A stretch of 64,000 nucleotides of DNA from IMGVR_UViG_3300008448_000001:1-64000; one strand, 5' to 3'. Shown: positions 12,950-59,672, counted from the stretch's first letter. Translations and numbers: made by a program. Notes: a model not told the origin generated them from the sequence alone.

Positions 12950-14050
12950 GTGGCAGACAAAAAACCCTTAAATATGTTGCTTTACAATCGTATTAAAGCG
13001 ACCTTTAAGAATGTCAGGATAAGTCATCAAAACGAGAAGCAAGAAAGGAACCGTCGAATTGATTTTGTTACCAATCGTGAAACGATCGACATAAAAAACT
13101 GGGGTGAGTCTTACTCTGTCTGCTGCCCGTTTTGCAACGATACTCGCTTTCGGTGTGTGATAAACCACCGGTATGGTACGCTGGACGAACACAACCGGAT
13201 TCAATCTAGGCTTGTGGTTTGCTTTAACGCCGGTTGTCCGCTGGCCTTGAAAACCCAAGACTGCTACGACCGACTTGAGCAGATGCTGACCGGAAGAAAA
13301 CTTTTTGACCTAGCTAAAGCGGAAATCGCAGTCGGTAGCGAGGTAGACATTGACGACTTCAGAATGAACTGGCCAGGTGAAGTTGTTCGCATAGATAAAC
13401 TTCCAGAAGACCATCCGGCTGTTTTGTGGCTTTCCGGAAACCGCGGTTTCAACGTGAAGAAACTCGGCACGTATTACAATGTTCACTGGTGCGTTAAAAG
13501 CAGACATGCTTTATGTCGCGACAGAATTGTCATACCGATTTACATGAACAAGAAGATGGTCGGTTTCCAAACCAGACCGCCTTACGACACAAACTGGAAG
13601 CTTGCGAGTGTTCCCAAGTACTACACCGCCAAGGGCACACCTAAGCGGCAGGTCATCTACAATCTTGGGAACATGATAAAGTGTGAAACCGGAATTGTTG
13701 TAGAGGGTGTTACGAGCGTTTGGCGGGGCGGTGATCCGTTCGGTGCTGTACTCGGTGCTGCTGTGACGCCGGCTCAATACGATTTACTCGTGAAGCACTT
13801 CAAAGACCATGCCGTTGTTTTGCTTTTCGACCCGGATCTGTTGCTAGAAAGCGAGAAGCGGAAAGTTTTGGACAGCTTGGTGGCAATCGAAAAACGCTTG
13901 AACGCGGATTTGAAAGGTGGTTGCTGCTTGGTTTGGTTGCCGGAGGGCACTGATCCGGCGGAATTCGAGGGGAATTTCTTGCGTAATTACATCGTCAATG
14001 CGGCGGCAGAGAAGGGTGTGACGGTCTCTTGGAGGAAGCGAAATGGCTAG
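12950..14050 (+). CDS. DNA primase (Zn-binding plus TOPRIM)
   Basis: CPFC..C.N.GC zinc domain, RIVIPI, FQTR, PKY, VEG, FDPD, LPEGTDP. Confidence 0.85.
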   Translation: MADKKPLNMLLYNRIKATFKNVRISHQNEKQERNRRIDFVTNRETIDIKNWGESYSVCCPFCNDTRFRCVINHRYGTLDEHNRIQSRLVVCFNAGCPLALKTQDCYDRLEQMLTGRKLFDLAKAEIAVGSEVDIDDFRMNWPGEVVRIDKLPEDHPAVLWLSGNRGFNVKKLGTYYNVHWCVKSRHALCRDRIVIPIYMNKKMVGFQTRPPYDTNWKLASVPKYYTAKGTPKRQVIYNLGNMIKCETGIVVEGVTSVWRGGDPFGAVLGAAVTPAQYDLLVKHFKDHAVVLLFDPDLLLESEKRKVLDSLVAIEKRLNADLKGGCCLVWLPEGTDPAEFEGNFLRNYIVNAAAEKGVTVSWRKRNG

Positions 14051-17000
14051 AAAGATAGAGAAGCTCGGCGGTGCCATCAGCGCTTCTGGTAAAGCAACTG
14101 TTGCCGAACAAAGACTTAAGCTGTCGCAGCTGGATAAAATACTTACAGGGTCTGAGATTTACAACTTGGACGCACCAGGTCTGCCTACGCTCTACGGCGG
14201 AAGTGCTTTTATTCAGTATGCTCAGGCGAAGGGCGACAGCAGTGATTCCTTCATGTATGACCTGATAAGGGCAGCTCTTCGGGACAAAGCGTTCGTTTTG
14301 CCAGTTGAAACGGCAGCGCATCAAACGAAAGACGCTCAGTTTTTGCCAGGGCATGTGTGGGGTTCAACTGTGGACGGGCCTAGGCGGGCCAAGATTATGA
14401 TCGTCAACAAAAACCCTTGGGTTTCAGCGATGAAAAACGGTCGTTGTTTTGGCGACGAGGATGGAAAAATCCTCATGGACATTTTTGCAGGCTGCAAGAT
14501 GACAGGTGTCGGAAACATTTACGTTACGCACCTTGTAAAGTTTATGCCGCCCAACGGTAAAACGACTTTCAGGGCTCAGTGGGTGAAGGACGGTGCTTAT
14601 CTTCTGGCACACGAGATCAAAATCGTGCAACCGGATTATATCTTGTGTCTAGGCACTGACGCCAGTAAGGCTTTGCTGGGCGACGGGCACGGTGTTAACG
14701 ACATGCTGGGTAAAGTCGTCAAGCACCGTTACAACGTTGCCTCGAACGAGAAAGACTTGGACTCGAGTTGGCGTGAGGCGAGCGTGATGACTGTCGTGCA
14801 TCCGCGTCAAACGGCAAGAGACCAGTCGGCTATCCGCGCGTTGGAAACGGGCTTAGCCGCCTTTGTAAACTTGACGCAGGGCAAGAACGTTAGCTTTGAC
14901 ACGGAAGTGGACCACAATGTGGTTTCTTCGTTTGATGAATTGATTTACTATTTTTCAGAAATCGACAAAGACTACGACCCTATTGAGGAGGTGATTGCGG
15001 TCGACGCGGAGTGGAACGGACAGCATCCGGTCAACAATGGTTCGTACATGCGGACAATTCAGCTTGCTTGGAAACCGGGAAAGGTAATCGGTATCATTCT
15101 GCATCTTGCAGGGGGTGCCGTTAATTCGGACATTGACGTCAAAAACAATCCCGAAGTTAAATCGTTGTTCAACGCTTTTTTCAAGGGAGGAAACGTCACC
15201 GTCACGCGAGAGGACGGGTCAGAAGCAGTTCTTCGGTTCAAACGCAAGCGTGTAATCGGGCACTTCTTCAACGCGGATTTGGAGTGGCTTGTTGCCTATG
15301 GTATAGACATTCAAGAGTGCTTCTCGTGCAAGCTCTATGACTTGGAAATACCTCCGGCAGATTCCGTACCGAAGGGCGCAAAGAGGCTTTTGAGCTTTTA
15401 CCTTGAAGACGGGTTTAAGCCCGGAGAAACCGTTCCGGCTTGGTACCGGACAAAGTACGAGGGCGGGGCTGACACGGGCCTTATGTGCCACGCGATAGAA
15501 GAGACGGCCAACTACAAGCTTGAGCTGCTTGCGGCCAGGTATCTTAACGCGCACAGATATGACGTGGATTTGCAAGAGTGGAAGACCAGCTACTGCAAAC
15601 AAAAGGGTCTGTCGTCGGAGTCGCTCGAAGGATATGGCGAATGCCCAGACAACGTCTTGCTGCCTTACGGCATGTGGGATGCGGATGTCACGCTTCGACT
15701 TTACTATAAGTTCAATCCTTTGCTCGATAGCGACTACGACGGTAACTGCTGCAGAGAAGCTTTTTGGGAAGCACAAATCGCCACGCCGGCTGTGTTGGAC
15801 ATTCACCGCAGCGGCATGACGCTCGACAGATCACGTGTTGATTTTCTGACGGTGCAGTTCCTTGACGGTCGAACCGCACTGGAGAGTAAAATACGCGAAA
15901 GTTTGAATTGGCCGGACTTCAACATTCGGTCTTTAACGCAGGTGCGAGAGGTCCTTTTCGGGCATTTGCTCAACGGCAAGCGAGACCCTGAGACAGGCGG
16001 TCCCGTTCGTGTGCGGCCAGCCGACGCGATCTCGTTGAACCTTATGCCGCTGTACGATACCAGCAAACCGCCGAAACAGTGGGAAGAGCTTCGACAAAAA
16101 AATGTTGAAAGCCAGCACAGCCCTTGTACCAGCAAGCAGGTTTTGTCAATTCTGGTGCAGACGGTGCCAGACGCAAAAACAAGAGAAATACTTGGGATGC
16201 TTCGGGATCACCGCTTTCTTGACCAAGCGTTGAAAACGGTTTTAAGGCCACCAAATACCGATCCTTGTACACAGGAAACTTGTTATGACGCTGACGGAAA
16301 CATGGAGTACGACAAGGGCCTAGCTTCCGTTTGTTGCTCAGACGGTAAAATCAGGACGCACATATACCAGACGAAGGAGACTGGTAGGTGGTCGAGCGCT
16401 AGACCCAACCTGACGAACATATCGAAGAAGCGTGACAAGGATTTCAAACGCATTCTAGGTAGCAGGTACAAGTATAAACTGCGAAGTATTTTAAAGGCCT
16501 CTCCGGGACACGTTTTCGTTGAAGCTGACTACGTCGGAGCAGAGCTTTTCGGTATGGCTGTTATGTCGGGAGACACAGCCATGATCGAGCACGCAAGGCG
16601 TAACCAGTTGGAGGACACGCACCCCAATTACTATGACATTCACTCGAATGTGGCAGTTAACGCCTTCAAGCTGAAATGCCCTCCAACCAAAAAAGGTCTG
16701 GAGCAGATCAAAAAGGATCACCTCCGCAACGTGGCGAAGTCCGTTATTTTCGGGATTGCTTACGGGCGAGGTGCCAAGGCTATTTCAGTGGGTGCGAAGG
16801 AGGAAGGTATCGATATTTCGGTGGACGAAGCAAGAGCGGTTATCAAGACCATTTTCGCAACGTACCCGAAGCTCGTACCGTTCTTCGAGGGTTGCAAGGA
16901 GCGTGCACGCGGTTACTACTTGGATAGTAATCATCAACCTGTGTCCGTACCGCGATACCTGTGCAACTGCTTTGGGCGATTTAGGCGTTTTCCGGACAGC

Positions 17001-17564
17001 TTTGGCGCTAGCGATTTGGAATCCGAGTTTGAACGGCAAGCTATGAATTTCCCGATTCAAAGCATGATTGCTTCGGTGGCAAGCAGGGCTGTTGGTTACC
17101 TGATTGACTACAGGAACAAGCAGATCAGCCTCGGGCACCACATGTTCAATTTGCTTCTGCAGATCCATGACGCATTGATCTTGGAGGTTCCGTACCGCTA
17201 CGTTAAACACGTGTGCGAGTATGTCATTCCTACGTACATGCGAAAAGCCGTCCCTATTTTCCCGACGCACATTAGCGGTATGCTCGAGGGTGAGCCCACA
17301 GGTGCGGGTCCCTTCTACCTTGGTATTGAGGGGGAGGTGACTACAAACTGGGGCGAGCGTATATTTGACGCGGACGCCAAAAGGCTTGGTCTGCCCGTAG
17401 GTCGTGGCGTTGTAGACGGATGCGTCGTGCACTATAGTCAGACGCCAAAAGCAGGCGAAGAGAGATCCGTTGTGGACGTCTCGAAACCTCGCGTCAAGCG
17501 AGACATAACACCTCCGGATCCGTATGTACCTGGTAAGTTCAAGTCATCAAAACGTAGGCGATAA
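14043..17564 (+). CDS. family A DNA polymerase with N-terminal uracil-DNA-glycosylase-like domain and 3'-5' exonuclease
   Basis: UDG-like block (YVTHLVK, EIKIVQPDYILCLG, HP); Exo I/II/III (VDAE, NADL, YGMWD); TGRWSS; motif A DYVGAEL; motif B RNVAKSVIFGIAYG; motif C QIHD. Confidence 0.95.
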   Translation: MARKIEKLGGAISASGKATVAEQRLKLSQLDKILTGSEIYNLDAPGLPTLYGGSAFIQYAQAKGDSSDSFMYDLIRAALRDKAFVLPVETAAHQTKDAQFLPGHVWGSTVDGPRRAKIMIVNKNPWVSAMKNGRCFGDEDGKILMDIFAGCKMTGVGNIYVTHLVKFMPPNGKTTFRAQWVKDGAYLLAHEIKIVQPDYILCLGTDASKALLGDGHGVNDMLGKVVKHRYNVASNEKDLDSSWREASVMTVVHPRQTARDQSAIRALETGLAAFVNLTQGKNVSFDTEVDHNVVSSFDELIYYFSEIDKDYDPIEEVIAVDAEWNGQHPVNNGSYMRTIQLAWKPGKVIGIILHLAGGAVNSDIDVKNNPEVKSLFNAFFKGGNVTVTREDGSEAVLRFKRKRVIGHFFNADLEWLVAYGIDIQECFSCKLYDLEIPPADSVPKGAKRLLSFYLEDGFKPGETVPAWYRTKYEGGADTGLMCHAIEETANYKLELLAARYLNAHRYDVDLQEWKTSYCKQKGLSSESLEGYGECPDNVLLPYGMWDADVTLRLYYKFNPLLDSDYDGNCCREAFWEAQIATPAVLDIHRSGMTLDRSRVDFLTVQFLDGRTALESKIRESLNWPDFNIRSLTQVREVLFGHLLNGKRDPETGGPVRVRPADAISLNLMPLYDTSKPPKQWEELRQKNVESQHSPCTSKQVLSILVQTVPDAKTREILGMLRDHRFLDQALKTVLRPPNTDPCTQETCYDADGNMEYDKGLASVCCSDGKIRTHIYQTKETGRWSSARPNLTNISKKRDKDFKRILGSRYKYKLRSILKASPGHVFVEADYVGAELFGMAVMSGDTAMIEHARRNQLEDTHPNYYDIHSNVAVNAFKLKCPPTKKGLEQIKKDHLRNVAKSVIFGIAYGRGAKAISVGAKEEGIDISVDEARAVIKTIFATYPKLVPFFEGCKERARGYYLDSNHQPVSVPRYLCNCFGRFRRFPDSFGASDLESEFERQAMNFPIQSMIASVASRAVGYLIDYRNKQISLGHHMFNLLLQIHDALILEVPYRYVKHVCEYVIPTYMRKAVPIFPTHISGMLEGEPTGAGPFYLGIEGEVTTNWGERIFDADAKRLGLPVGRGVVDGCVVHYSQTPKAGEERSVVDVSKPRVKRDITPPDPYVPGKFKSSKRRR

Positions 17565-22987: not shown

Positions 22988-23806
22988 ATGTTTACGGTGT
23001 GTGTGTTGCTTTATGGCGACTACCCTGAACTGGCTAAGCGCGTGCTAGGGTCTATCTCTAGCACGCATTTAGTCGGAGAAGTTCGTCTTGGGCTTAACGC
23101 AGTGTCCGAGGCGACATTTTCTTTTGCGCAAGAGTGGGCAGCTGAAAAGTCCGCTTCGGTTCCGGTGAAAACATATCGCCCGAGCGGCAACAAAAACGTT
23201 GGCAAGTATCCGTTGATGAGTCGCATGTTTGTTGGCTTGCGTACTTCTCATGTTATGTGGTTCGACGACGACAGCTTTTTAGTTAACGCCGTCCCGGAGT
23301 GGTGGCAAACCGTACTTAGCCACGCTGCTTTATTCGATGTTTACGGAAGTCTGCATCGAATAAAGCAGCGAGGTAACCAGTACTTGGCTATTCCGCAACA
23401 ATCTTGGTTTGGCGGTAAGCCCGTTTCTCCTCGTCACGTATACGACTTTGCCACGGGGGGATGGTGGGTGGGTAATGTTGGTTTTCTGCGTAAGTGGGGC
23501 TACCCTTTTCCGCAGCTGCAACACAACGGAGGTGATTCCGTTCTGGGCGAGTTGGTGCGGCAACAGGGTGCCAAGCTAGGGCACGCCAGCACTTCAGTTG
23601 CAGTTTGCTACTGCGAGGCTTGTGCCAAAGTCTCACAGGCGATCCGATCGCGGCCTATTGGTGGCGTTAACATCAACGTGGGCGGTCGAGCAGGTAGACG
23701 CGGTATAGGCGTTTCCGAGGAGAACTACGTTTTCTCGGACGGCAACCCGTTTCCGTCTTTATTGCATCATTCTTTTGACGTGGAAGTGCTGAATTATGGA
23801 GTTTGA
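22988..23806 (+). CDS. GT-A fold (family 2-like) glycosyltransferase
   Basis: N-terminal beta strand, NVGKYP, VMWFDDDS (DxD), FATGGW, GGD. Confidence 0.7.
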   Translation: MFTVCVLLYGDYPELAKRVLGSISSTHLVGEVRLGLNAVSEATFSFAQEWAAEKSASVPVKTYRPSGNKNVGKYPLMSRMFVGLRTSHVMWFDDDSFLVNAVPEWWQTVLSHAALFDVYGSLHRIKQRGNQYLAIPQQSWFGGKPVSPRHVYDFATGGWWVGNVGFLRKWGYPFPQLQHNGGDSVLGELVRQQGAKLGHASTSVAVCYCEACAKVSQAIRSRPIGGVNINVGGRAGRRGIGVSEENYVFSDGNPFPSLLHHSFDVEVLNYGV

Positions 23807-45503: not shown

Positions 45504-45572
45504 CTTCGGTACCGTGCCGAACGTTGCAAGATTTTGAGTACGATCATTAGCTTTTTTTAAGGATATTTTGAC

Positions 45573-46641: not shown

Positions 46642-46770
46642 CACCCGCAAAATCGTTGATTTATTGGTCAAGGTGGTCAAGAAATAACGCGCAACCAGAT
46701 CTGACCCGTTGCCATCGGCAACTGGTCTCGCTTGGGTTTTCGGTTTAAGTTTTTTTTGGAGGTTTTGAAT

Positions 46771-47097: not shown

Positions 47098-47120
47098 GCC
47101 GGATAGGCTCTGGTTTTTTT
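47098..47120 (+). terminator. short hairpin plus T-run
   Basis: GCCGGA-TAGGC-TCTGGT then TTTTTT. Confidence 0.45.
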
Positions 47121-47240
47121 GTGTAGGTTTTTCGGTTTCAGTTTTTACTTTGGAGGTTTGATTGTGGCGGCCATTTTGCGTGGCTTAGCTGCTTCAAACA
47201 GCTTTTTATTTGTGACTGATTTTTAAAGAAGGTGCATAAC

Positions 47241-47960: not shown

Positions 47961-47975
47961 CGAGACAAGGGCGAC

Positions 47976-48149
47976 CGGAATAGGGGCTTTGTAGCCGCTA
48001 TTCCGAGCAATGCAGACTGCCCGAAAACCGCATGAAGAAAGCCGTGCCCGAAGCGAAAGGGCTAGTGCGGAAGGTTATAAGACGGGTAGCTCCGGCAACA
48101 AATCCGGGCAGTCTGAATCGCTCTTTGCGTGATCACGCAAACGTAGAGC
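47976..48149 (+). ncRNA. candidate structured non-coding RNA of unknown family
   Basis: 220-bp intergenic gap containing nested stems, including a perfect 11-bp CAGACTGCCCG / CGGGCAGTCTG pair. Confidence 0.5.
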
Positions 48150-48183
48150 TGACAGTTTTTAAGTAATACAAGCCAGAGGGCAA

Positions 48184-49059
48184 ATGATGACGAACACTAA
48201 TGAAAAGATAAAGCCAAAGCCGAAGTCAAAGGCAAAGCCGAAGCCGAAGAAAAAGCCGGAGAAGGGTTTAACGACTAAGGCTGAAAGAGATTTAGCGGAG
48301 AGCATTGGTTTTAAAGGCAGATACCTTTCTAAGTTGCTACAGGAAGCCGCAAAGTACTGTAAGTTTCAAGGCGGGCAATGCCTCCCGGATGCGGCCAGCT
48401 ACTTGCGTGAAATAGCAAGGCAGCACGCTGTGAAGGTAAAACAGCAGTGGGGAATGTCTGTTCGACAGTACAACCTGTTGCAAAAGAAAGCAAATTGGCT
48501 GCTCAGATCGTTTTCGACCGGTTATTCGATGGGGGAGCTGCGACGGCTTGTCGTCGACGGAAAGGACTTCTGCGTCGATGACAACCGGCGATACTATTCG
48601 AAATCTTACAGGTTCTCGGCAAAACACGGTGAAATCACTGTCCAGCTTACGCTGCAAGACTTGAAAAATATTAGGCGGATTGAAGGTGTCTGGACGGTTC
48701 GCCGCAAGGGGACAGCTGCAAGTTGGCTTGAGTCTCGCAGTTCACTCAGTAAATACCAGGTCACCATGGTCGACGGCCATTTGGTTGGCACATCGCACGG
48801 CAAAACCGTCGCAGAGTGTCACGGACTTGAAGCAGGAAAAGCTATTCGCAATGACACGGGAGAGGTCAAATTTCTCAACCGATTCATCGGGTTTGCAGAT
48901 CGAAGGCTCGCAGGGGCTTGCGAAATCGGCGTACGAGCCTTCTGTGATCGACACAATTTGAACATCGATTTCGGGTACCGGATCGATTTCTTATTGAGTC
49001 TTAACGACAACATTGCAGTACCTTACCTTGATCGCTTGGCGAAGAAGCTGCAGCGATAG
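48184..49059 (+). CDS. basic hypothetical protein with KP-rich N-terminus
   Basis: 291 aa; C-terminal GACEIGVRAFC motif. Confidence 0.75.
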   Translation: MMTNTNEKIKPKPKSKAKPKPKKKPEKGLTTKAERDLAESIGFKGRYLSKLLQEAAKYCKFQGGQCLPDAASYLREIARQHAVKVKQQWGMSVRQYNLLQKKANWLLRSFSTGYSMGELRRLVVDGKDFCVDDNRRYYSKSYRFSAKHGEITVQLTLQDLKNIRRIEGVWTVRRKGTAASWLESRSSLSKYQVTMVDGHLVGTSHGKTVAECHGLEAGKAIRNDTGEVKFLNRFIGFADRRLAGACEIGVRAFCDRHNLNIDFGYRIDFLLSLNDNIAVPYLDRLAKKLQR

Positions 49060-54736: not shown

Positions 54737-56800
54737 ATGTCAAATGAAATGCAGGGCAAAAGCGAAACGAGCGAAATCAAGGATGAACGCCAGGGACCGG
54801 CGTCGCCTGGAGACGGTTATCGCTTCCTTGGGCCTAAGGAACTTGTTCTCGAAGGTGACGAGTTTTGGCACAATGAACTCGGATGGTTCGAGTCCAGAAA
54901 AGATAGTTGTCGTGACAAAAAGCAATCTAATTCGGTCAAATACCGACGTCGAAACAAGTTTAGCGAAGGTGAGTTTGTGCGGATTGTAAAGCCTTTAGAC
55001 GGGGCGACCGGATGGGGAGATTGGGCGGACGAACTTGACGGTAAGGTGGTTAAGATCACGCATTCTTCCCAGGACGGATTATATGATGGTGAATCGCATT
55101 GGTATCGACTGGAAGGTTGCTCCCTTCTGTACTTTCGCGCCGACTGGCTAGCCCCTGCGTCCGCCGAGGCGGCCAAGAAGACCGAAGAAGTTAAAGCACC
55201 GGCAGTCTCAAAGGATAAACGCCAGGGACCGGCGTCGCCTGGAGTCGGCTACCGCTTTCTTGAGCCCGAGGAACTTGTCGTCGAGGGCGACGAGTTTTGG
55301 TCCGGGATTGACAGCCGGTGGGAGGCCAGCGGTATGTACCGCCACAAGGGGGAGCAAGCTGCTCGTTTGTACCGTCGCCGCAACGAGTTCAAAGACGGTG
55401 AAATGGTGCGGGTCGTGAAACCTTTGGATGTCGAGCAGGAACCAAAGTGGGTGGAAAGCATGGACGGCTTTGACGGCCAGATACACGCTGTTCACAGCGC
55501 GGCACTAAAGTCTGGCCGTTTCCACTATTTCCTTCAAGGCACTGAAACTTGGAAGTTCAACGGCGACTGGCTAGCCCCTGCGTCCGCTGAACAAAAGGCC
55601 GAGGAAGCCAAAAAGGCCGAAGCGGGCGGGGAAGCTAAAGCAACGGCAGTCTCGAAGGATAAATGCCCAGGATCGGCAGAGCCTGGAGACGGTTACAGGC
55701 TCCTTGACCCTAGGGAACTTGTCGTCGAAGGCGACGAGGTTTGGAGTTATCAAAACACATGGATCAGTTCCGGAAACTATAGACGTAGCGGCAGGGAACA
55801 ATCGAATACTGCCAAGTATCGACGCCGCAACAAGTTCGCCGTAGGTGAACTTGTGAGGATCGTCAAGCCGTTGGACACAAAGGTCGGGCCGGGATGGCTG
55901 TCTTGTTTTGATCGCTGGATCAATGAAAACAAGGTGTTTACCATCGCCGAGTCAACACCCTCGCGCAACTACGAGGTCGCGGAAAACTGCTACTCCTTTG
56001 CCCCGAACTGGTTAGCCCCAGCCTCCAAGGAGCAAAAGGCCCAGAAGGAAGAGGAAGCCAAAAAGGCCGAGGAAGCCAAAAAGGCTGAGGAAACCAACAA
56101 GGCCGAGGAAGCCAAAAAGGCCGAGGAAGCCAAAAAGGCTGAGGAAACCAAAAAGGCCGAAGAAGACCGCCGTTGCCCGGCAGAACCGGGCGAAGCCTAC
56201 CGTTTCCTTGACCCCAAGGAACTCGTCGTCGAAGGCGACGAGGTTTGGGCATGTGCTAGCTCTGGTGGCTACGAGTGGGTGCCTACCTTAAACCACCGCT
56301 CGGCGGCTGGGAAACAAGGTGCTGGGTTTAGGTATCGTCGCCGCAACAAGTTTGCCGAAGGCGAACTTGTGAGGATCGTGAAACCTTTGGAAACGCCTGG
56401 GCCGCACGGGTGGGTAACTGCGATGAACGCGCTTGACGGCAGGGTAGGCACGATCAGGCTTTCTTTGCAGGGTAGTGAATCGTGGTACAAGATGAAAGAC
56501 TGTTTCCTCTGGCGCTTTTACGGCGACTGGCTAGCCCCTGTGCCAGCCAAACAAAAGGCTGATGAAGCCAAGAAGACCGAGGACGCAGACAAGGTAGCTG
56601 AAGTCGCGGCTACTGACCCGTGGCTATCACCCACAACAGACACGGTCGAACGTGCGATAACGCCACTTTTTGCGGTAAATGTTCACGCACCGTTTACGTT
56701 GCAAGACCTTGCGGAATTCGTGATGGCAGCGAAAAAAGAAAACGGCGAGTATTTCACCCTTCGGCTGGAGGGGGATTGGCTTCAGATTGGCCGAGATTAG
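54737..56800 (+). CDS. repeat protein with four tandem modules of about 145 aa and a KKAEE(A/T) linker
   Basis: 4x PGxxYRxLxPxELVxEGDExW...YRRRNxF..GE.VR.VKPL...WLAP. Confidence 0.85.
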   Translation: MSNEMQGKSETSEIKDERQGPASPGDGYRFLGPKELVLEGDEFWHNELGWFESRKDSCRDKKQSNSVKYRRRNKFSEGEFVRIVKPLDGATGWGDWADELDGKVVKITHSSQDGLYDGESHWYRLEGCSLLYFRADWLAPASAEAAKKTEEVKAPAVSKDKRQGPASPGVGYRFLEPEELVVEGDEFWSGIDSRWEASGMYRHKGEQAARLYRRRNEFKDGEMVRVVKPLDVEQEPKWVESMDGFDGQIHAVHSAALKSGRFHYFLQGTETWKFNGDWLAPASAEQKAEEAKKAEAGGEAKATAVSKDKCPGSAEPGDGYRLLDPRELVVEGDEVWSYQNTWISSGNYRRSGREQSNTAKYRRRNKFAVGELVRIVKPLDTKVGPGWLSCFDRWINENKVFTIAESTPSRNYEVAENCYSFAPNWLAPASKEQKAQKEEEAKKAEEAKKAEETNKAEEAKKAEEAKKAEETKKAEEDRRCPAEPGEAYRFLDPKELVVEGDEVWACASSGGYEWVPTLNHRSAAGKQGAGFRYRRRNKFAEGELVRIVKPLETPGPHGWVTAMNALDGRVGTIRLSLQGSESWYKMKDCFLWRFYGDWLAPVPAKQKADEAKKTEDADKVAEVAATDPWLSPTTDTVERAITPLFAVNVHAPFTLQDLAEFVMAAKKENGEYFTLRLEGDWLQIGRD
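56051..56158 (+). repeat. 18-bp tandem repeat x6 (54-bp higher-order unit x2) encoding EEAKKA
   Basis: GAGGAAGCCAAAAAGGCY units. Confidence 0.9.
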
Positions 56801-58286: not shown

Positions 58287-59672
58287 ATGCCTTATGCGTC
58301 CGAAGCACAGCGTCGATTTTTCAATGCAAACCGTAAAAGTTTAGAGTCCGAGGGAGTTGATGTGGATGAGTGGAACAGCTCGTCGAGAGGGAAAAAACTT
58401 CCGGAAAAAAAAGCAAACACTCCCGGACAGACTGGAAACATTCCGGTTACTCCACCGCTACCCGTAAGACCAAAGGCTGCTCCGTCGGCCCACATTCCAC
58501 GCCCTGCACGTCGCCAGACTACTCTGGCTGACATGCAGGGCAACCAGGCGATGGCGACTCAAAAAGTCGCTACGCCTTTTTTTTATCTATTGGGCGATTT
58601 GGCTAAGGCTGCGGCGCAGGTGAAATACGCCCGTCTTGGCGATTTACCGGCATCTAAACCGGATGCGGGGGTTGGAAACACGGCTTTAGCTGGAAATGCA
58701 ACGCAGAACTCGCCAAAACCCGCGGCACCGTTTAAAGGCGGTCCAGGTAAAAAAGGCCTAGGTGTGCCCATGACTCTGCTGGATCGCATGGGGTTAGGCT
58801 CCGGTGCGGCGGATGGAACTTTGCAGGCAAACCTAAGCAATCTAGCTTCCAGCGTTGGTGATTTTGCAACCAGTCCGCTTGGAATCGGTGCGGGGCTTGG
58901 ATTGGGCGCCCTTGGCACTGGCATGTACTTGGGTAGCAGGCGTAAACGCGATGACGACGAGAAGGAGGCAGGTCTCGGTGCGTTGGCTAAATACGCTGCA
59001 GGGCAGTCCGAAGCAAAGCGTAAAAGCGAGGCTAACGAAATCGTAGATATGAATTCCATCGGCGGAAACGTAGCTGACTGTTTGTCGCCATTTAGCTGGG
59101 GTGGCGAACGTGCGGGCAGGTCCCAGGCTATGGCTGAGGCTGCGGGAGATGGGGCAGACATTAACGTAAGGCACCCTGGCGCTACTTCCTTGCTGTTTGG
59201 TGCTGGCGGTGGGGCTCTAGGTAGTTCTTTCGGTCCGGCAGGTGCGGCAGCTGGCTCGTTAGCAGGAGTATTACTTTCCGGGTTGATGCGAAGGCAGGAA
59301 ATGCAACGTATCAACGATTTATATGATGAAAGCGCAGCAGGTGGCAAGCTAAAACCAAAACACCCCGATTTTTCCGGGTTGTCAGCTGCGTTTTTACCTT
59401 TAAGGGGGCCACACCGGACAGGGCAGCTTGAGGCTAGCAGGGTTATGTCCGGTGCAAGAGACCCGAAAGCTAGGCGTAAAGATGGCACTCGAGATGCACT
59501 TTATGGGGTGGATAGTACTGTGCCGTTTGCGGGACTTTTACACGGCTACGCACAAAACCTTAAAACTCAGTTTGCATCGCCGTCGACTGCGACGGAAGCC
59601 GAAAAGCCAGAAAAAGAGGCTGGCATTAAGCTATTGGCTATGTTATCAGCTAAATTCGTAAGTGGGGCTTGA
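58287..59672 (+). CDS. putative virion-associated modular protein with Gly-rich hydrophobic segments
   Basis: MPYASEAQRRFF N-terminal motif; glycine-zipper-like segments; KxA motifs. Confidence 0.7.
   Translation: MPYASEAQRRFFNANRKSLESEGVDVDEWNSSSRGKKLPEKKANTPGQTGNIPVTPPLPVRPKAAPSAHIPRPARRQTTLADMQGNQAMATQKVATPFFYLLGDLAKAAAQVKYARLGDLPASKPDAGVGNTALAGNATQNSPKPAAPFKGGPGKKGLGVPMTLLDRMGLGSGAADGTLQANLSNLASSVGDFATSPLGIGAGLGLGALGTGMYLGSRRKRDDDEKEAGLGALAKYAAGQSEAKRKSEANEIVDMNSIGGNVADCLSPFSWGGERAGRSQAMAEAAGDGADINVRHPGATSLLFGAGGGALGSSFGPAGAAAGSLAGVLLSGLMRRQEMQRINDLYDESAAGGKLKPKHPDFSGLSAAFLPLRGPHRTGQLEASRVMSGARDPKARRKDGTRDALYGVDSTVPFAGLLHGYAQNLKTQFASPSTATEAEKPEKEAGIKLLAMLSAKFVSGA

What the first reader, a model, noticed from the sequence alone, without database searches (positions are those of the whole stretch)
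47976..48149. Candidate novel multi-stem ncRNA in a 220-bp gap
Seen: hairpin A (CGGAATAG.GGCT-TTGT-AGCC.CTATTCCG, 47976-48005). A perfect 11-bp closing stem (48013-48023/48105-48115) encloses CCGCA/TGCGG (48028-32/48066-70), GCCC-GAAGCGAAA-GGGC (48046-48062) and a small CGG..CCG hairpin, with purine-rich joiners. Hairpin C follows at 48120-48149. This is the largest non-coding gap I found in a gene-dense window, and I cannot assign it to a known family. Inference: riboswitch, ribozyme or small RNA, and a possible trans-encoded partner for the RAMP/Nop-like proteins.
Basis: partly seen in the sequence, partly recalled or inferred. Interest (0 to 1): 0.65.

Follow-up and report, generated by a model that had tools for sequence, protein, structure and literature searches.

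The report
Orphan structured RNA in jumbo phage
A 223-base gap between two small genes of an uncultivated 205-kb phage holds a strongly folding, unusually well conserved RNA-like element that matches no known RNA family, but only two sequence variants exist, so its fold and function cannot be proven yet.

Summary
The interval 47976-48149 folds far better than shuffles (-72.9 vs -51.9 +/- 3.9 kcal/mol, z -5.4). The window is the first 64 kb of a 204.8-kb IMG/VR phage contig with all genes on the + strand. No Rfam family matches, and there is no tRNA, intrinsic terminator, sigma-70 promoter, repeat copy or credible small ORF. The finding is three modules with different histories. Hairpin A is one of about ten gene-end hairpins in this phage. 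A three-way-junction core (48005-48123) occurs only in this lineage. Hairpin C belongs to the leader of the downstream 291-aa gene and is shared with a relative that lacks the core. In the only divergent copy (L008), 135 nt (47997-48131) have no substitutions, while flanking genes differ by about 14% (P about 1e-9). The one change in hairpin A turns G-C into G-U. That indicates nucleotide-level constraint on a + strand RNA, but two variants allow no covariation test. The closest other relative (L002) lacks the element, so it is accessory. Pfam found no RAMP, Nop, L7Ae or Cas protein in about 85 ORFs. Verdict: a real, probably functional orphan structured RNA, most likely a cis-acting leader or processing module. 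A riboswitch or ribozyme role is unproven.

The parts
47968..47974 (+). P0 5' strand (AGGGCGA). It pairs with 48118-48124 and closes a 157-nt domain holding hairpin A and the three-way-junction core.
   Evidence: MFE and centroid structures. Identical in L008.
47976..48005 (+). Hairpin A, 15 nt after the TAG stop of the 77-aa gene. It is a member of this phage's class of gene-end hairpins.
   Evidence: pair probability about 1.0; z -5.7. Similar hairpins lie 25-50 nt after about ten other stops. C47996U in L008 turns G-C into G-U. No U-tract follows.
48005..48123 (+). Three-way-junction core: P1 (11 bp perfect, extendable to 19 bp with 2 mismatches), J1/2 AAAA, the P2-P2a arm, J2/3 AA, and the P3-P3a arm.
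   Evidence: (-45.8 kcal/mol, z -3.6). 100% identical in L008. Absent from L002. Single copy.
48013..48023 (+). P1 5' strand CAGACUGCCCG.
48105..48115 (+). P1 3' strand CGGGCAGUCUG.
48028..48070 (+). P2 arm: CCGCAU/GUGCGG, an asymmetric purine-rich internal loop (GAAGAAAGCCGU / UA), and the P2a hairpin GCCC-GAAGCGAAA-GGGC.
   Evidence: P2 0.77, P2a 0.83.
48073..48104 (+). P3 arm: GGUU/AAUC, a 6x6 internal loop, and the CGGG-UAGC-UCCG hairpin. This is the least certain part of the fold.
   Evidence: P3 0.38, P3a 0.55.
48118..48124 (+). P0 3' strand (UCGCUCU). It can also pair in the P1 extension or in the outer stem of hairpin C, so these are mutually exclusive alternatives.
48124..48141 (+). 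Perfect 18-nt palindrome TTTGCGTGATCACGCAAA (inner hairpin C). It is part of the leader of the 291-aa gene and is shared, in degenerate form, with L002.
   Evidence: pair probability 0.86-0.99. The centre changes AT to CG in L008.
48174..48186 (+). Shine-Dalgarno-like AGAGGG and the ATG of the 291-aa gene (context; not sequestered by the element in the predicted fold).
   Evidence: L008 has GGGAAAATTATG here.

Best explanation
The gap holds a real, selectively constrained RNA element read on the + strand, co-transcribed with the flanking genes. All genes in the window point the same way, and no sigma-70-type promoter or intrinsic terminator lies in the gap. It is a composite. Hairpin A is the ordinary gene-end hairpin of the 77-aa gene. 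Inner hairpin C and the SD region are the native leader of the 291-aa gene. Between them sits a lineage-specific three-way-junction domain of about 120 nt, closed by an 11-19-bp stem; with hairpin A it can be enclosed by a further 7-bp stem (157 nt in all). The mechanism I commit to is inferred, not shown. The domain is a cis-acting leader or processing module. Its long closing helix and sequence-constrained loops would be recognised by a protein (an RNase III-type nuclease or a phage or host RNA-binding factor). That recognition would separate the upstream and downstream cistrons and set the 5' end, stability or translation of the 291-aa mRNA, and it could release a stable RNA of 120-160 nt as a by-product. 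Shown: the stems, their thermodynamic significance, the absence of any family match, single-copy status, presence or absence among relatives, and nucleotide-level conservation. Inferred: transcription, the strand used, and the function.
For: Stems and stability. Constraint: against L008 there are 0 substitutions in 47997-48131 (135 nt; 56 of these are unpaired in the MFE structure), while the flanking genes differ at 226 of 1596 sites. This gives P about 1e-9 for the block and about 2e-4 for the unpaired sites alone, so loops as well as stems are constrained. Not coding: all three codon positions are invariant, whereas flanking genes change mostly at position 3. The 40- and 44-codon ORFs lack an SD. 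The only changes inside the 44-codon ORF are non-synonymous. There is no Pfam hit. Strand: G-U pairs occur in P0, P2, P3 and P3a, and the hairpin A change G-C to G-U in L008 would be an A.C mismatch on the other strand. The + fold is -82.9 and the minus fold -77.0 kcal/mol. All ORFs of the gene model are on +. Modular origin: homology with L002 starts exactly at 48121, the end of the P1 extension. Gene-end hairpins recur. Precedent: giant phage 201phi2-1 has 11 sRNAs, 8 derived from 5' UTRs and 3 intergenic, all of unknown function (PMC11512511).
Against: There is no expression data. Only two sequence variants exist (window, identical to L027 and L028; and L008), and the core is identical in both, so there is no covariation evidence at all. 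Other intergenic blocks are equally conserved between the two phages (45504-45572 and 47136-47240, 97%). Conservation could therefore reflect DNA-level regulation or recombination at intergenic joints rather than RNA structure. The element is dispensable: L002, with an 89% identical 291-aa gene, lacks it, and three exact-pattern scans of IMG/VR found no copy elsewhere on the L002 contig. The minus strand also folds well (z -3.3). No RNase III or RNA-binding gene was identified near it, and the 291-aa protein has no recognisable fold.
Confidence: 0.4

Rival explanations
1. It is a stand-alone, trans-acting stable small RNA (a protein sponge or scaffold, or a base-pairing sRNA), excised from the polycistronic transcript. 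Its paired 5' and 3' ends (P0/P1) would protect it from exonucleases.
For: The domain is closed, with its ends paired. Loops and joiners are invariant. Its presence/absence behaves like an independent accessory insert between gene modules. Giant phages encode intergenic sRNAs.
Against: It has no promoter or terminator of its own. No convincing antisense target was found: ten 10-mer antisense matches at seven places on the window's + strand against about 4.4 expected, none at a start codon. No partner protein was identified.
Confidence: 0.2
2. It is a new class of riboswitch or self-cleaving ribozyme. The three-way junction with A-rich joiners would form a ligand pocket or active site, with the P2a loop docking into the P3 internal loop.
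For: The architecture has two arms on a long closing stem and short A-rich joiners (AAAA, AA, 0 nt). Unpaired nucleotides are fully conserved. There is no Rfam match, so if functional it would be new.
Against: No expression platform was found. There is no terminator. The SD is not sequestered in the predicted fold, and the candidate anti-SD complementarity (UGCCC:GGGCA) is lost in L008, where the SD region reads GGGAA. The same gene is expressed without the element in L002. No hammerhead, twister, pistol, hatchet or HDV core was detected by permissive cmscan, and by eye CUGAAUC is not CUGANGA. The phylogenetic range is tiny.
Confidence: 0.1
3. It is a DNA-level element. The inverted repeats and the 18-bp palindrome would be protein-binding sites (operator, promoter for a phage RNA polymerase, recombination joint), and the RNA fold would be incidental.
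For: Both strands fold, as expected for inverted repeats in DNA. The palindrome at 48124-48141 keeps its symmetry through a double change, AT to CG, in L008. Other intergenic blocks are also more conserved than genes, and mosaic breakpoints lie in intergenic DNA.
Against: 135 invariant nt is long for a promoter or operator. The G-U pairs and the G-C to G-U change favour RNA on the + strand. No motif of the element recurs elsewhere in 64 kb. GC skew shows no switch.
Confidence: 0.1
4. It has no function of its own. The block would be identical in the two lineages because it was recently exchanged by recombination, or because it hitch-hikes with neighbouring regulatory sequence. The stems would be remnants, for example of terminators.
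For: These phages are mosaic, and cassette breakpoints fall at intergenic repeats. The element is missing in L002 and in all other relatives.
Against: The identical block is confined to the non-coding DNA, while substitutions resume within about 35 nt on the gene side (47950, 47954). A z-score of -4 to -5 for a nested multi-stem fold is not expected of decaying sequence. tblastx finds no similarity to any gene remnant.
Confidence: 0.12
5. It is a processive antitermination RNA (like HK022 put or the Bacillus EAR element). It would modify RNA polymerase so that it reads through the many gene-end hairpins downstream.
For: It is an intragenic-array position in a long co-directional gene block rich in gene-end hairpins. 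It is a structured RNA with constrained loops. The comparison with put and EAR is from my own knowledge, not from a tool.
Against: No promoter lies immediately upstream. Relatives with the same downstream genes lack it. No sequence or structure match was tested or found.
Confidence: 0.05
6. It encodes a small protein: the 44-codon ORF 48032-48166 or the 40-codon ORF 48010-48132.
For: Both ORFs are open and on the + strand.
Against: Neither ATG has a Shine-Dalgarno sequence, whereas neighbouring genes have GAGGAG or AGAGGG. There are no synonymous-type changes, and the only two changes in the 44-codon ORF are non-synonymous. Pfam gives nothing better than E 0.15. Gene callers called no gene here in L008, L027 or L028. 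Degenerate back-translated scans found no relative.
Confidence: 0.03

Closest known systems
5'-UTR-derived and intergenic sRNAs of giant phages (201phi2-1 sRNA001-011, phiKZ sRNA upstream of gp182; PMC11512511)
   Same: A structured RNA of 100-250 nt in the non-coding DNA of a jumbo phage, lying in or before the leader of a protein gene. It is conserved among close relatives, and its function is unknown.
   Different: Those RNAs were defined by transcript ends (ONT-cappable-seq); here there is no expression data. There is no sequence relationship: the phage is far from any cultured phage (DNA polymerase at most 26% identical; no DNA hit in 50,697 phage records).
RNase III processing sites between early genes of T7-like phages (own knowledge)
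   Same: An intercistronic location in a polycistronic phage transcript. A long, imperfect double helix (19 bp with two mismatches, or P0 plus P1) that could be a substrate.
   Different: T7 R-sites are single irregular hairpins of about 50-60 nt. This element carries an 81-nt branched insert with invariant loops, and cleavage is untested.
Three-way-junction riboswitch aptamers and hammerhead-type ribozymes
   Same: A closing stem with two arms, short purine-rich joiners, and potential loop/internal-loop docking.
   Different: No family model matches. The hammerhead core is absent. No expression platform was found. The taxonomic range is one phage lineage.
REP-type palindromes / naRNA4 (RF02564), the best Rfam near-hit
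   Same: Hairpin A resembles the REP hairpin outline (17.5 bits, E 1.5).
   Different: The score is far below the gathering score of 59.5. REPs are multi-copy, and this is a single copy in 64 kb.
Phage T4 stable RNAs C and D (own knowledge)
   Same: Phage-encoded small stable RNAs of about 120-140 nt, processed from longer transcripts, with function still unknown.
   Different: The T4 RNAs lie in the tRNA cluster. There are no tRNAs in this window, and no sequence comparison was possible.

Membership tests
Any Rfam 15 family (4227 models) | Covariance-model score at or above the family's gathering threshold | tested here: not met
   0 hits in the 64-kb window. (permissive, 701 nt): the best hits are naRNA4 at 17.5 bits (cut-off 59.5), mir-1538 at 17.5 (78) and STnc50 at 16.9 (55), all with E above 1.
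tRNA / tmRNA / tRNA-like | Cloverleaf detected by ARAGORN | tested here: not met
   no tRNA or tmRNA gene in the window.
Riboswitch | Aptamer coupled to an expression platform (terminator/antiterminator or SD sequestration) | tested here: not met
   No intrinsic terminator lies in 47961-48183. The SD is not paired with the element in the MFE or centroid structure. The only SD complementarity is lost in L008.
Riboswitch | Ligand-dependent structural change | not testable with these tools
   This needs in-line probing, SHAPE or ITC.
Structured ncRNA in general | Compensatory base changes supporting the stems across homologs | tested here: inconclusive
   Only two variants exist and the core is 100% identical. 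The single informative change is G-C to G-U in hairpin A. No other homolog was found.
Hammerhead ribozyme | CUGANGA, GAAA and UH core strands around a three-way junction | tested here: not met
   The joiners are AAAA, AA and 0 nt. The only CUGA is CUGAAUC, at 48113. No Rfam hit even at E 10.
Self-cleaving ribozyme (any) | Site-specific self-cleavage | not testable with these tools
   This needs in-vitro transcription and a cleavage assay.
Intrinsic terminator | GC-rich hairpin followed directly by a U-tract | tested here: not met
   One search lists none within the gap. Hairpin A is followed by AGCAAUG. The U5 run at 48156-60 lies 6 nt beyond hairpin C.
REP / MITE-type repeated element | Multiple dispersed copies; terminal inverted repeats with target-site duplication | tested here: not met
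   It is single copy in the window and absent from related loci. No flanking direct repeat is visible around 48005 and 48123.
K-turn RNA bound by L7Ae/Nop-type proteins; crRNA bound by RAMPs | K-turn (3-nt bulge plus tandem G.A pairs) or CRISPR repeats, together with a cognate protein gene | tested here: not met
   By inspection, the P2 internal loop (12 nt / UA) does not fit the K-turn consensus. No tandem or CRISPR repeats. No RAMP, Nop, L7Ae, fibrillarin or Cas Pfam family in about 85 ORFs.
Small protein-coding gene | RBS, substitution bias by codon position, protein homologs | tested here: not met
   No SD. No third-position bias and only non-synonymous changes. No family hit and no relatives.
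RNase III processing site | About 20 bp of (imperfect) double helix cleaved by RNase III | tested here: inconclusive
   A 19-bp helix with 2 mismatches exists, but it has only about 0.2 probability against P0. Cleavage cannot be tested here.

The most novel reading that the evidence does not exclude
The 120-nt three-way-junction domain is the founding member of a new class of phage regulatory RNA. It could be a ligand-sensing or self-cleaving RNA, or an RNA that reprograms RNA polymerase or the ribosome. It would have been acquired as a mobile accessory module in the early region of an uncultivated jumbo-phage lineage. Complete invariance of 56 unpaired nucleotides against a background of 14% divergence would reflect a tertiary fold or binding pocket.
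Probability: 0.1. Interest if true: 0.8.

Novelty: new variant of a known kind. Interest (0 to 1): 0.42.

Why it matters
Jumbo phages are known to make small RNAs, but almost none has a function or a defined structure. This orphan element is compact and strongly folding, and it is more conserved than the protein genes beside it. A natural 'minus' allele exists (L002), which makes it a tractable candidate for learning how such phages process or regulate early transcripts. If the junction binds a ligand or cleaves itself, it would be a new RNA class. If it is only a processing or stability module, it is an ordinary though previously undescribed regulatory feature.

Tried and rejected
1. Rfam at gathering and at E up to 10: nothing.

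2. Homolog hunting.
- blastn against 50,697 phage records: no match.
- Three exact or degenerate pattern scans of IMG/VR: only the contig itself.
- Loci around homologs of the 77-aa protein (10 clusters) and the 291-aa protein (25 clusters): the element occurs only in L008 (97.3% identical) and in identical copies L027 and L028. It is absent from L002, L005-L015, L029-L031 and L034-L036.
- Metagenome scan with six back-translated patterns: 600 chance stretches, none confirmed.
- Metagenome scan with a loop-anchored pattern: 11 hits, all chance 25-29-nt matches in gut contigs. That scan did not return even the known copies, so the collection does not hold them and its silence is weak evidence.
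- Genome scans: nothing, or a chance hit in a Spirochaetales MAG contig that I judged by eye to be an ndk gene. An apparent 'KVIR..ATNP' likeness to NDK in the 44-codon ORF was not supported by Pfam.

3. Covariance model of the core: no second copy in the window or in any fetched locus.

4. Decayed-gene hypothesis: tblastx against related loci found nothing.

5. Stop-codon read-through of the 77-aa gene stimulated by hairpin A: rejected, because L008 has TAG followed in frame by TGA.

6. Function of the neighbours. No Pfam or PHROG family for the 161-, 77- and 291-aa proteins. AlphaFold model of the 291-aa protein (pLDDT 80.6): no PDB fold match (Foldseek E above 0.08; VIA best Z 5.1 on a helical N-terminal piece) and no PDB sequence match.

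7. Promoter motif search by k-mer enrichment in intergenic DNA: only T-rich words.

8. Antisense target search: not above chance in any meaningful place.

9. RAMP/Nop partner: no such proteins.

Full report
WHAT THE WINDOW IS

The window is positions 1-64000 of IMGVR_UViG_3300008448_000001, a 204,794-bp viral contig. All plausible genes lie on the + strand and are densely packed. GC is about 50%, and cumulative GC skew rises without a turn.

Recognisable genes include an SbcCD-like pair, a helicase, a family-A DNA polymerase fused to a UDG domain, thymidylate kinase, endonuclease VII and glycosyltransferases. The polymerase is at most 26% identical to any of 50,697 GenBank phages. The region of interest has no DNA match there. 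This is therefore an uncultivated jumbo phage far from any model phage.

THE OBSERVATION

- The repeat finder extends the 11-bp stem to a 19-nt, 89% complementary inverted repeat, 48005-48023/48105-48123.
- RNAfold of the whole gap gives -82.9 kcal/mol against -65.6 +/- 4.7 for dinucleotide shuffles (z -3.7).
The closed 157-nt domain 47968-48124 has z -4.1 to -4.5.
- In the ensemble, hairpin A and P1 are essentially certain. P2 and P2a have probability about 0.8. The P3 arm has 0.4-0.55. The inner part of hairpin C has 0.99. The outer five pairs of hairpin C have only 0.03, because that strand prefers to pair with 47968-47974 (stem P0).

- The minus strand also folds well (z -3.3).
- Several other stretches of the window, mostly inside ORFs, fold about as well.
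- Stability alone therefore does not single this locus out.

WHAT IT IS NOT

- No Rfam 15 family matches at gathering. A permissive scan gives only junk at E above 1.
- No tRNA or tmRNA.
- No sigma-70-type promoter and no intrinsic terminator in the gap.
- No tandem or CRISPR repeats.
- No second copy of any part of it in 64 kb, by pattern search or by a covariance model of the core.
- The two small ORFs in the gap (40 and 44 codons) lack a Shine-Dalgarno sequence, have no family match, were not called as genes in related contigs, and show no coding-type substitution pattern (see below).
- tblastx finds no trace of a decayed gene.
- Read-through of the upstream TAG is excluded, because the relative L008 has TAG-TGA in frame.

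RELATIVES

I fetched loci around homologs of both flanking proteins.

The element is found only in:
- identical copies of the same phage from two other assemblies (L027 and L028, 100% identical over 5.9 and 1.8 kb);
- one divergent lineage, L008 (JGI 3300045409).

It is absent from:
- L002 (IMG/VR 3300016476_001599). Its 291-aa gene is 89% identical. Homology with the window begins exactly at 48121, immediately after the 3' end of the P1 extension. Upstream of that point, L002 carries a different cassette ending in a T-rich leader repeat.
- All loci where the 77-aa homolog is followed by other genes.
- The loci of the 56%-identical homologs of the 291-aa protein.

Exact or degenerate pattern scans of IMG/VR, of the metagenome collection and of 185,579 genomes gave only the contig itself or chance hits. 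The metagenome scan did not return even the known copies, so its silence is weak evidence.

THREE MODULES, NOT ONE

1. Hairpin A sits 15 nt after the stop of the 77-aa gene. A scan for strong local hairpins shows about ten similar ones 25-50 nt after other stop codons: 2587, 8791, 20044, 35899, 36562, 43318, 46693, 54658 and 63364. Hairpin A is best read as this phage's ordinary gene-end hairpin.
2. The inner palindrome of hairpin C and the SD region are shared, in degenerate form, with L002. They belong to the leader of the 291-aa gene.
3. Only the three-way-junction core 48005-48123 is specific to the window and L008 lineages.

CONSTRAINT

Between the window and L008, the flanking genes differ at 226 of 1596 sites (14%), mostly at third codon positions in the 77-aa and 291-aa genes.

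The gap has six differences, all outside 47997-48131:
- C47961T
- C47996T
- A48132C and T48133G
- G48146A
- C48181A

Zero changes in 135 nt has P about 1e-9 at the flanking rate. Zero changes in the 56 positions that are unpaired in the MFE structure has P about 2e-4. So both stems and loops are constrained, at all three 'codon' positions. That argues for a non-coding function with sequence-specific contacts.

C47996T converts a G-C pair of hairpin A into G-U. This is tolerated only in + strand RNA. G-U pairs also occur in P0, P2, P3 and P3a. G48146A breaks the outer stem of hairpin C, consistent with that stem not forming.

Against over-reading this: two other intergenic blocks are also 97% identical between the two phages (45504-45572 and 47136-47240). 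Mosaic breakpoints fall in intergenic DNA. Conserved non-coding joints are therefore a general property of these genomes.

MECHANISM

The core has these features:
- a long closing helix;
- joiners of 4, 2 and 0 nt (AAAA, AA, none), so P1 and P3 probably stack;
- a P2 arm with an asymmetric purine-rich internal loop and a 9-nt loop (GAAGCGAAA);
- a P3 arm with a 6x6 internal loop.

The segment 48118-48124 can pair in three mutually exclusive ways: P0, the P1 extension, or the outer stem of hairpin C.

I found no expression platform. There is no terminator, the SD is not sequestered, and the only SD complementarity (UGCCC:GGGCA) is lost in L008. The same downstream gene exists without the element in L002.

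I therefore rank the explanations as follows:
- cis-acting leader or processing module recognised by a protein: 0.4
- stand-alone processed small RNA: 0.2
- riboswitch or ribozyme: 0.1
- DNA-level site: 0.1
- non-functional, recently exchanged block: 0.12
- put/EAR-like antitermination RNA: 0.05
- small protein: 0.03

NEIGHBOURS AND THE RAMP/NOP IDEA

The 161-, 77- and 291-aa proteins have no Pfam or PHROG family. The 291-aa protein belongs to a conserved family of 25 clusters with invariant His, Cys and Gly motifs. A confident model (pLDDT 80.6) has no PDB sequence or fold match.

Pfam scans of about 85 ORFs gave no RAMP, Nop, L7Ae, fibrillarin or Cas family.

COMPARISON AND NOVELTY

The nearest described things are the 5'-UTR-derived and intergenic sRNAs mapped in giant Pseudomonas phages (11 in 201phi2-1, function unknown; PMC11512511). 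From my own knowledge I add the RNase III sites between T7 early genes and the stable RNAs C and D of T4.

The element is not a member of any curated family. It is a new, orphan variant of a known kind of feature: structured non-coding RNA in a phage leader or intergenic region.

Interest is moderate. It is real and probably functional, and natural plus and minus alleles exist. However, its range is one lineage, its fold is unverified, and its function is inferred.

Noticed in passing
window 58461-58680 (hairpins 58501-58544 and 58543-58586, then T8 at 58578-58585): This is the most stable local structure in the window (-96.3 kcal/mol, z -5.4, both strands). Two strong hairpins are followed by a U8 run, which looks like a terminator, yet they lie inside the 461-codon ORF 58287-59672.
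   Followed up: partly
window 23032-23075 and 23326-23369: Two near-perfect long hairpins (-28.6 and -22.3 kcal/mol; regional z -4.7 to -4.9) lie inside ORF 22988-23806, which has no Pfam family.
   Followed up: no
window 2587, 8791, 20044, 35899, 36562, 43318, 46693, 47971, 54658, 63364 (starts of 44-nt windows): There is a recurrent class of strong hairpins 25-50 nt after stop codons, most without a clear U-tract. They are probably this phage's gene-end (termination or 3'-stability) signals. Hairpin A of the finding is one of them.
   Followed up: partly
window 46735-46770 and 47118-47164; L002 2567-2604 and 2897-2930: A repeated T-rich leader (GGTTTTTCGGTTT..TTTACTTTGGAGG plus a start codon) precedes genes or mini-ORFs (for example 47165-47227). 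Mosaic breakpoints between the window and L002 coincide with the conserved intergenic repeat 46642-46761, reminiscent of cassette shuffling at regulatory repeats.
   Followed up: partly
window 45504-45572 and 47136-47240, compared with L008: These intergenic blocks are 97% identical between the two phage lineages, while the adjacent genes are only 79-95% identical. Non-coding joints are generally better conserved than the small early genes.
   Followed up: partly
window 48124-48141: A perfect 18-bp palindrome, TTTGCGTGATCACGCAAA, lies 43 nt upstream of the 291-aa gene. In L008 its centre changes from GATC to GCGC, which keeps the symmetry. In L002 it is degenerate. It could be an operator or an RNA hairpin.
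   Followed up: partly
window 48184-49059: The 291-aa protein has a Lys/Pro-rich N-terminal tail encoded by 12/18/24-nt tandem repeats (48203-48258; 6-nt indel in L008). It belongs to a conserved phage family (25 clusters; invariant GYSMG, HG, EGVWT, GTSHG and GAC..G..FC.RH motifs). It has no Pfam family and no PDB fold match, and in distant relatives it lies next to RadC-like genes.
   Followed up: yes
window 14043-17564: A 1173-aa protein combines an N-terminal uracil-DNA-glycosylase-superfamily domain, a 3'-5' exonuclease and a family-A DNA polymerase. It is at most 26% identical to any GenBank phage polymerase.
   Followed up: partly
window 56051-56165: An 18-nt tandem repeat (6.4 copies, 88% matches) lies inside the 687-aa gene 54737-56800.
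   Followed up: no
L029/L030 2381-2500: The 56%-identical homolog of the 291-aa gene is also preceded by a GC-rich gap of about 120 nt with several small hairpins. It has no sequence or covariance-model similarity to the element studied here. It may be an analogous leader.
   Followed up: no
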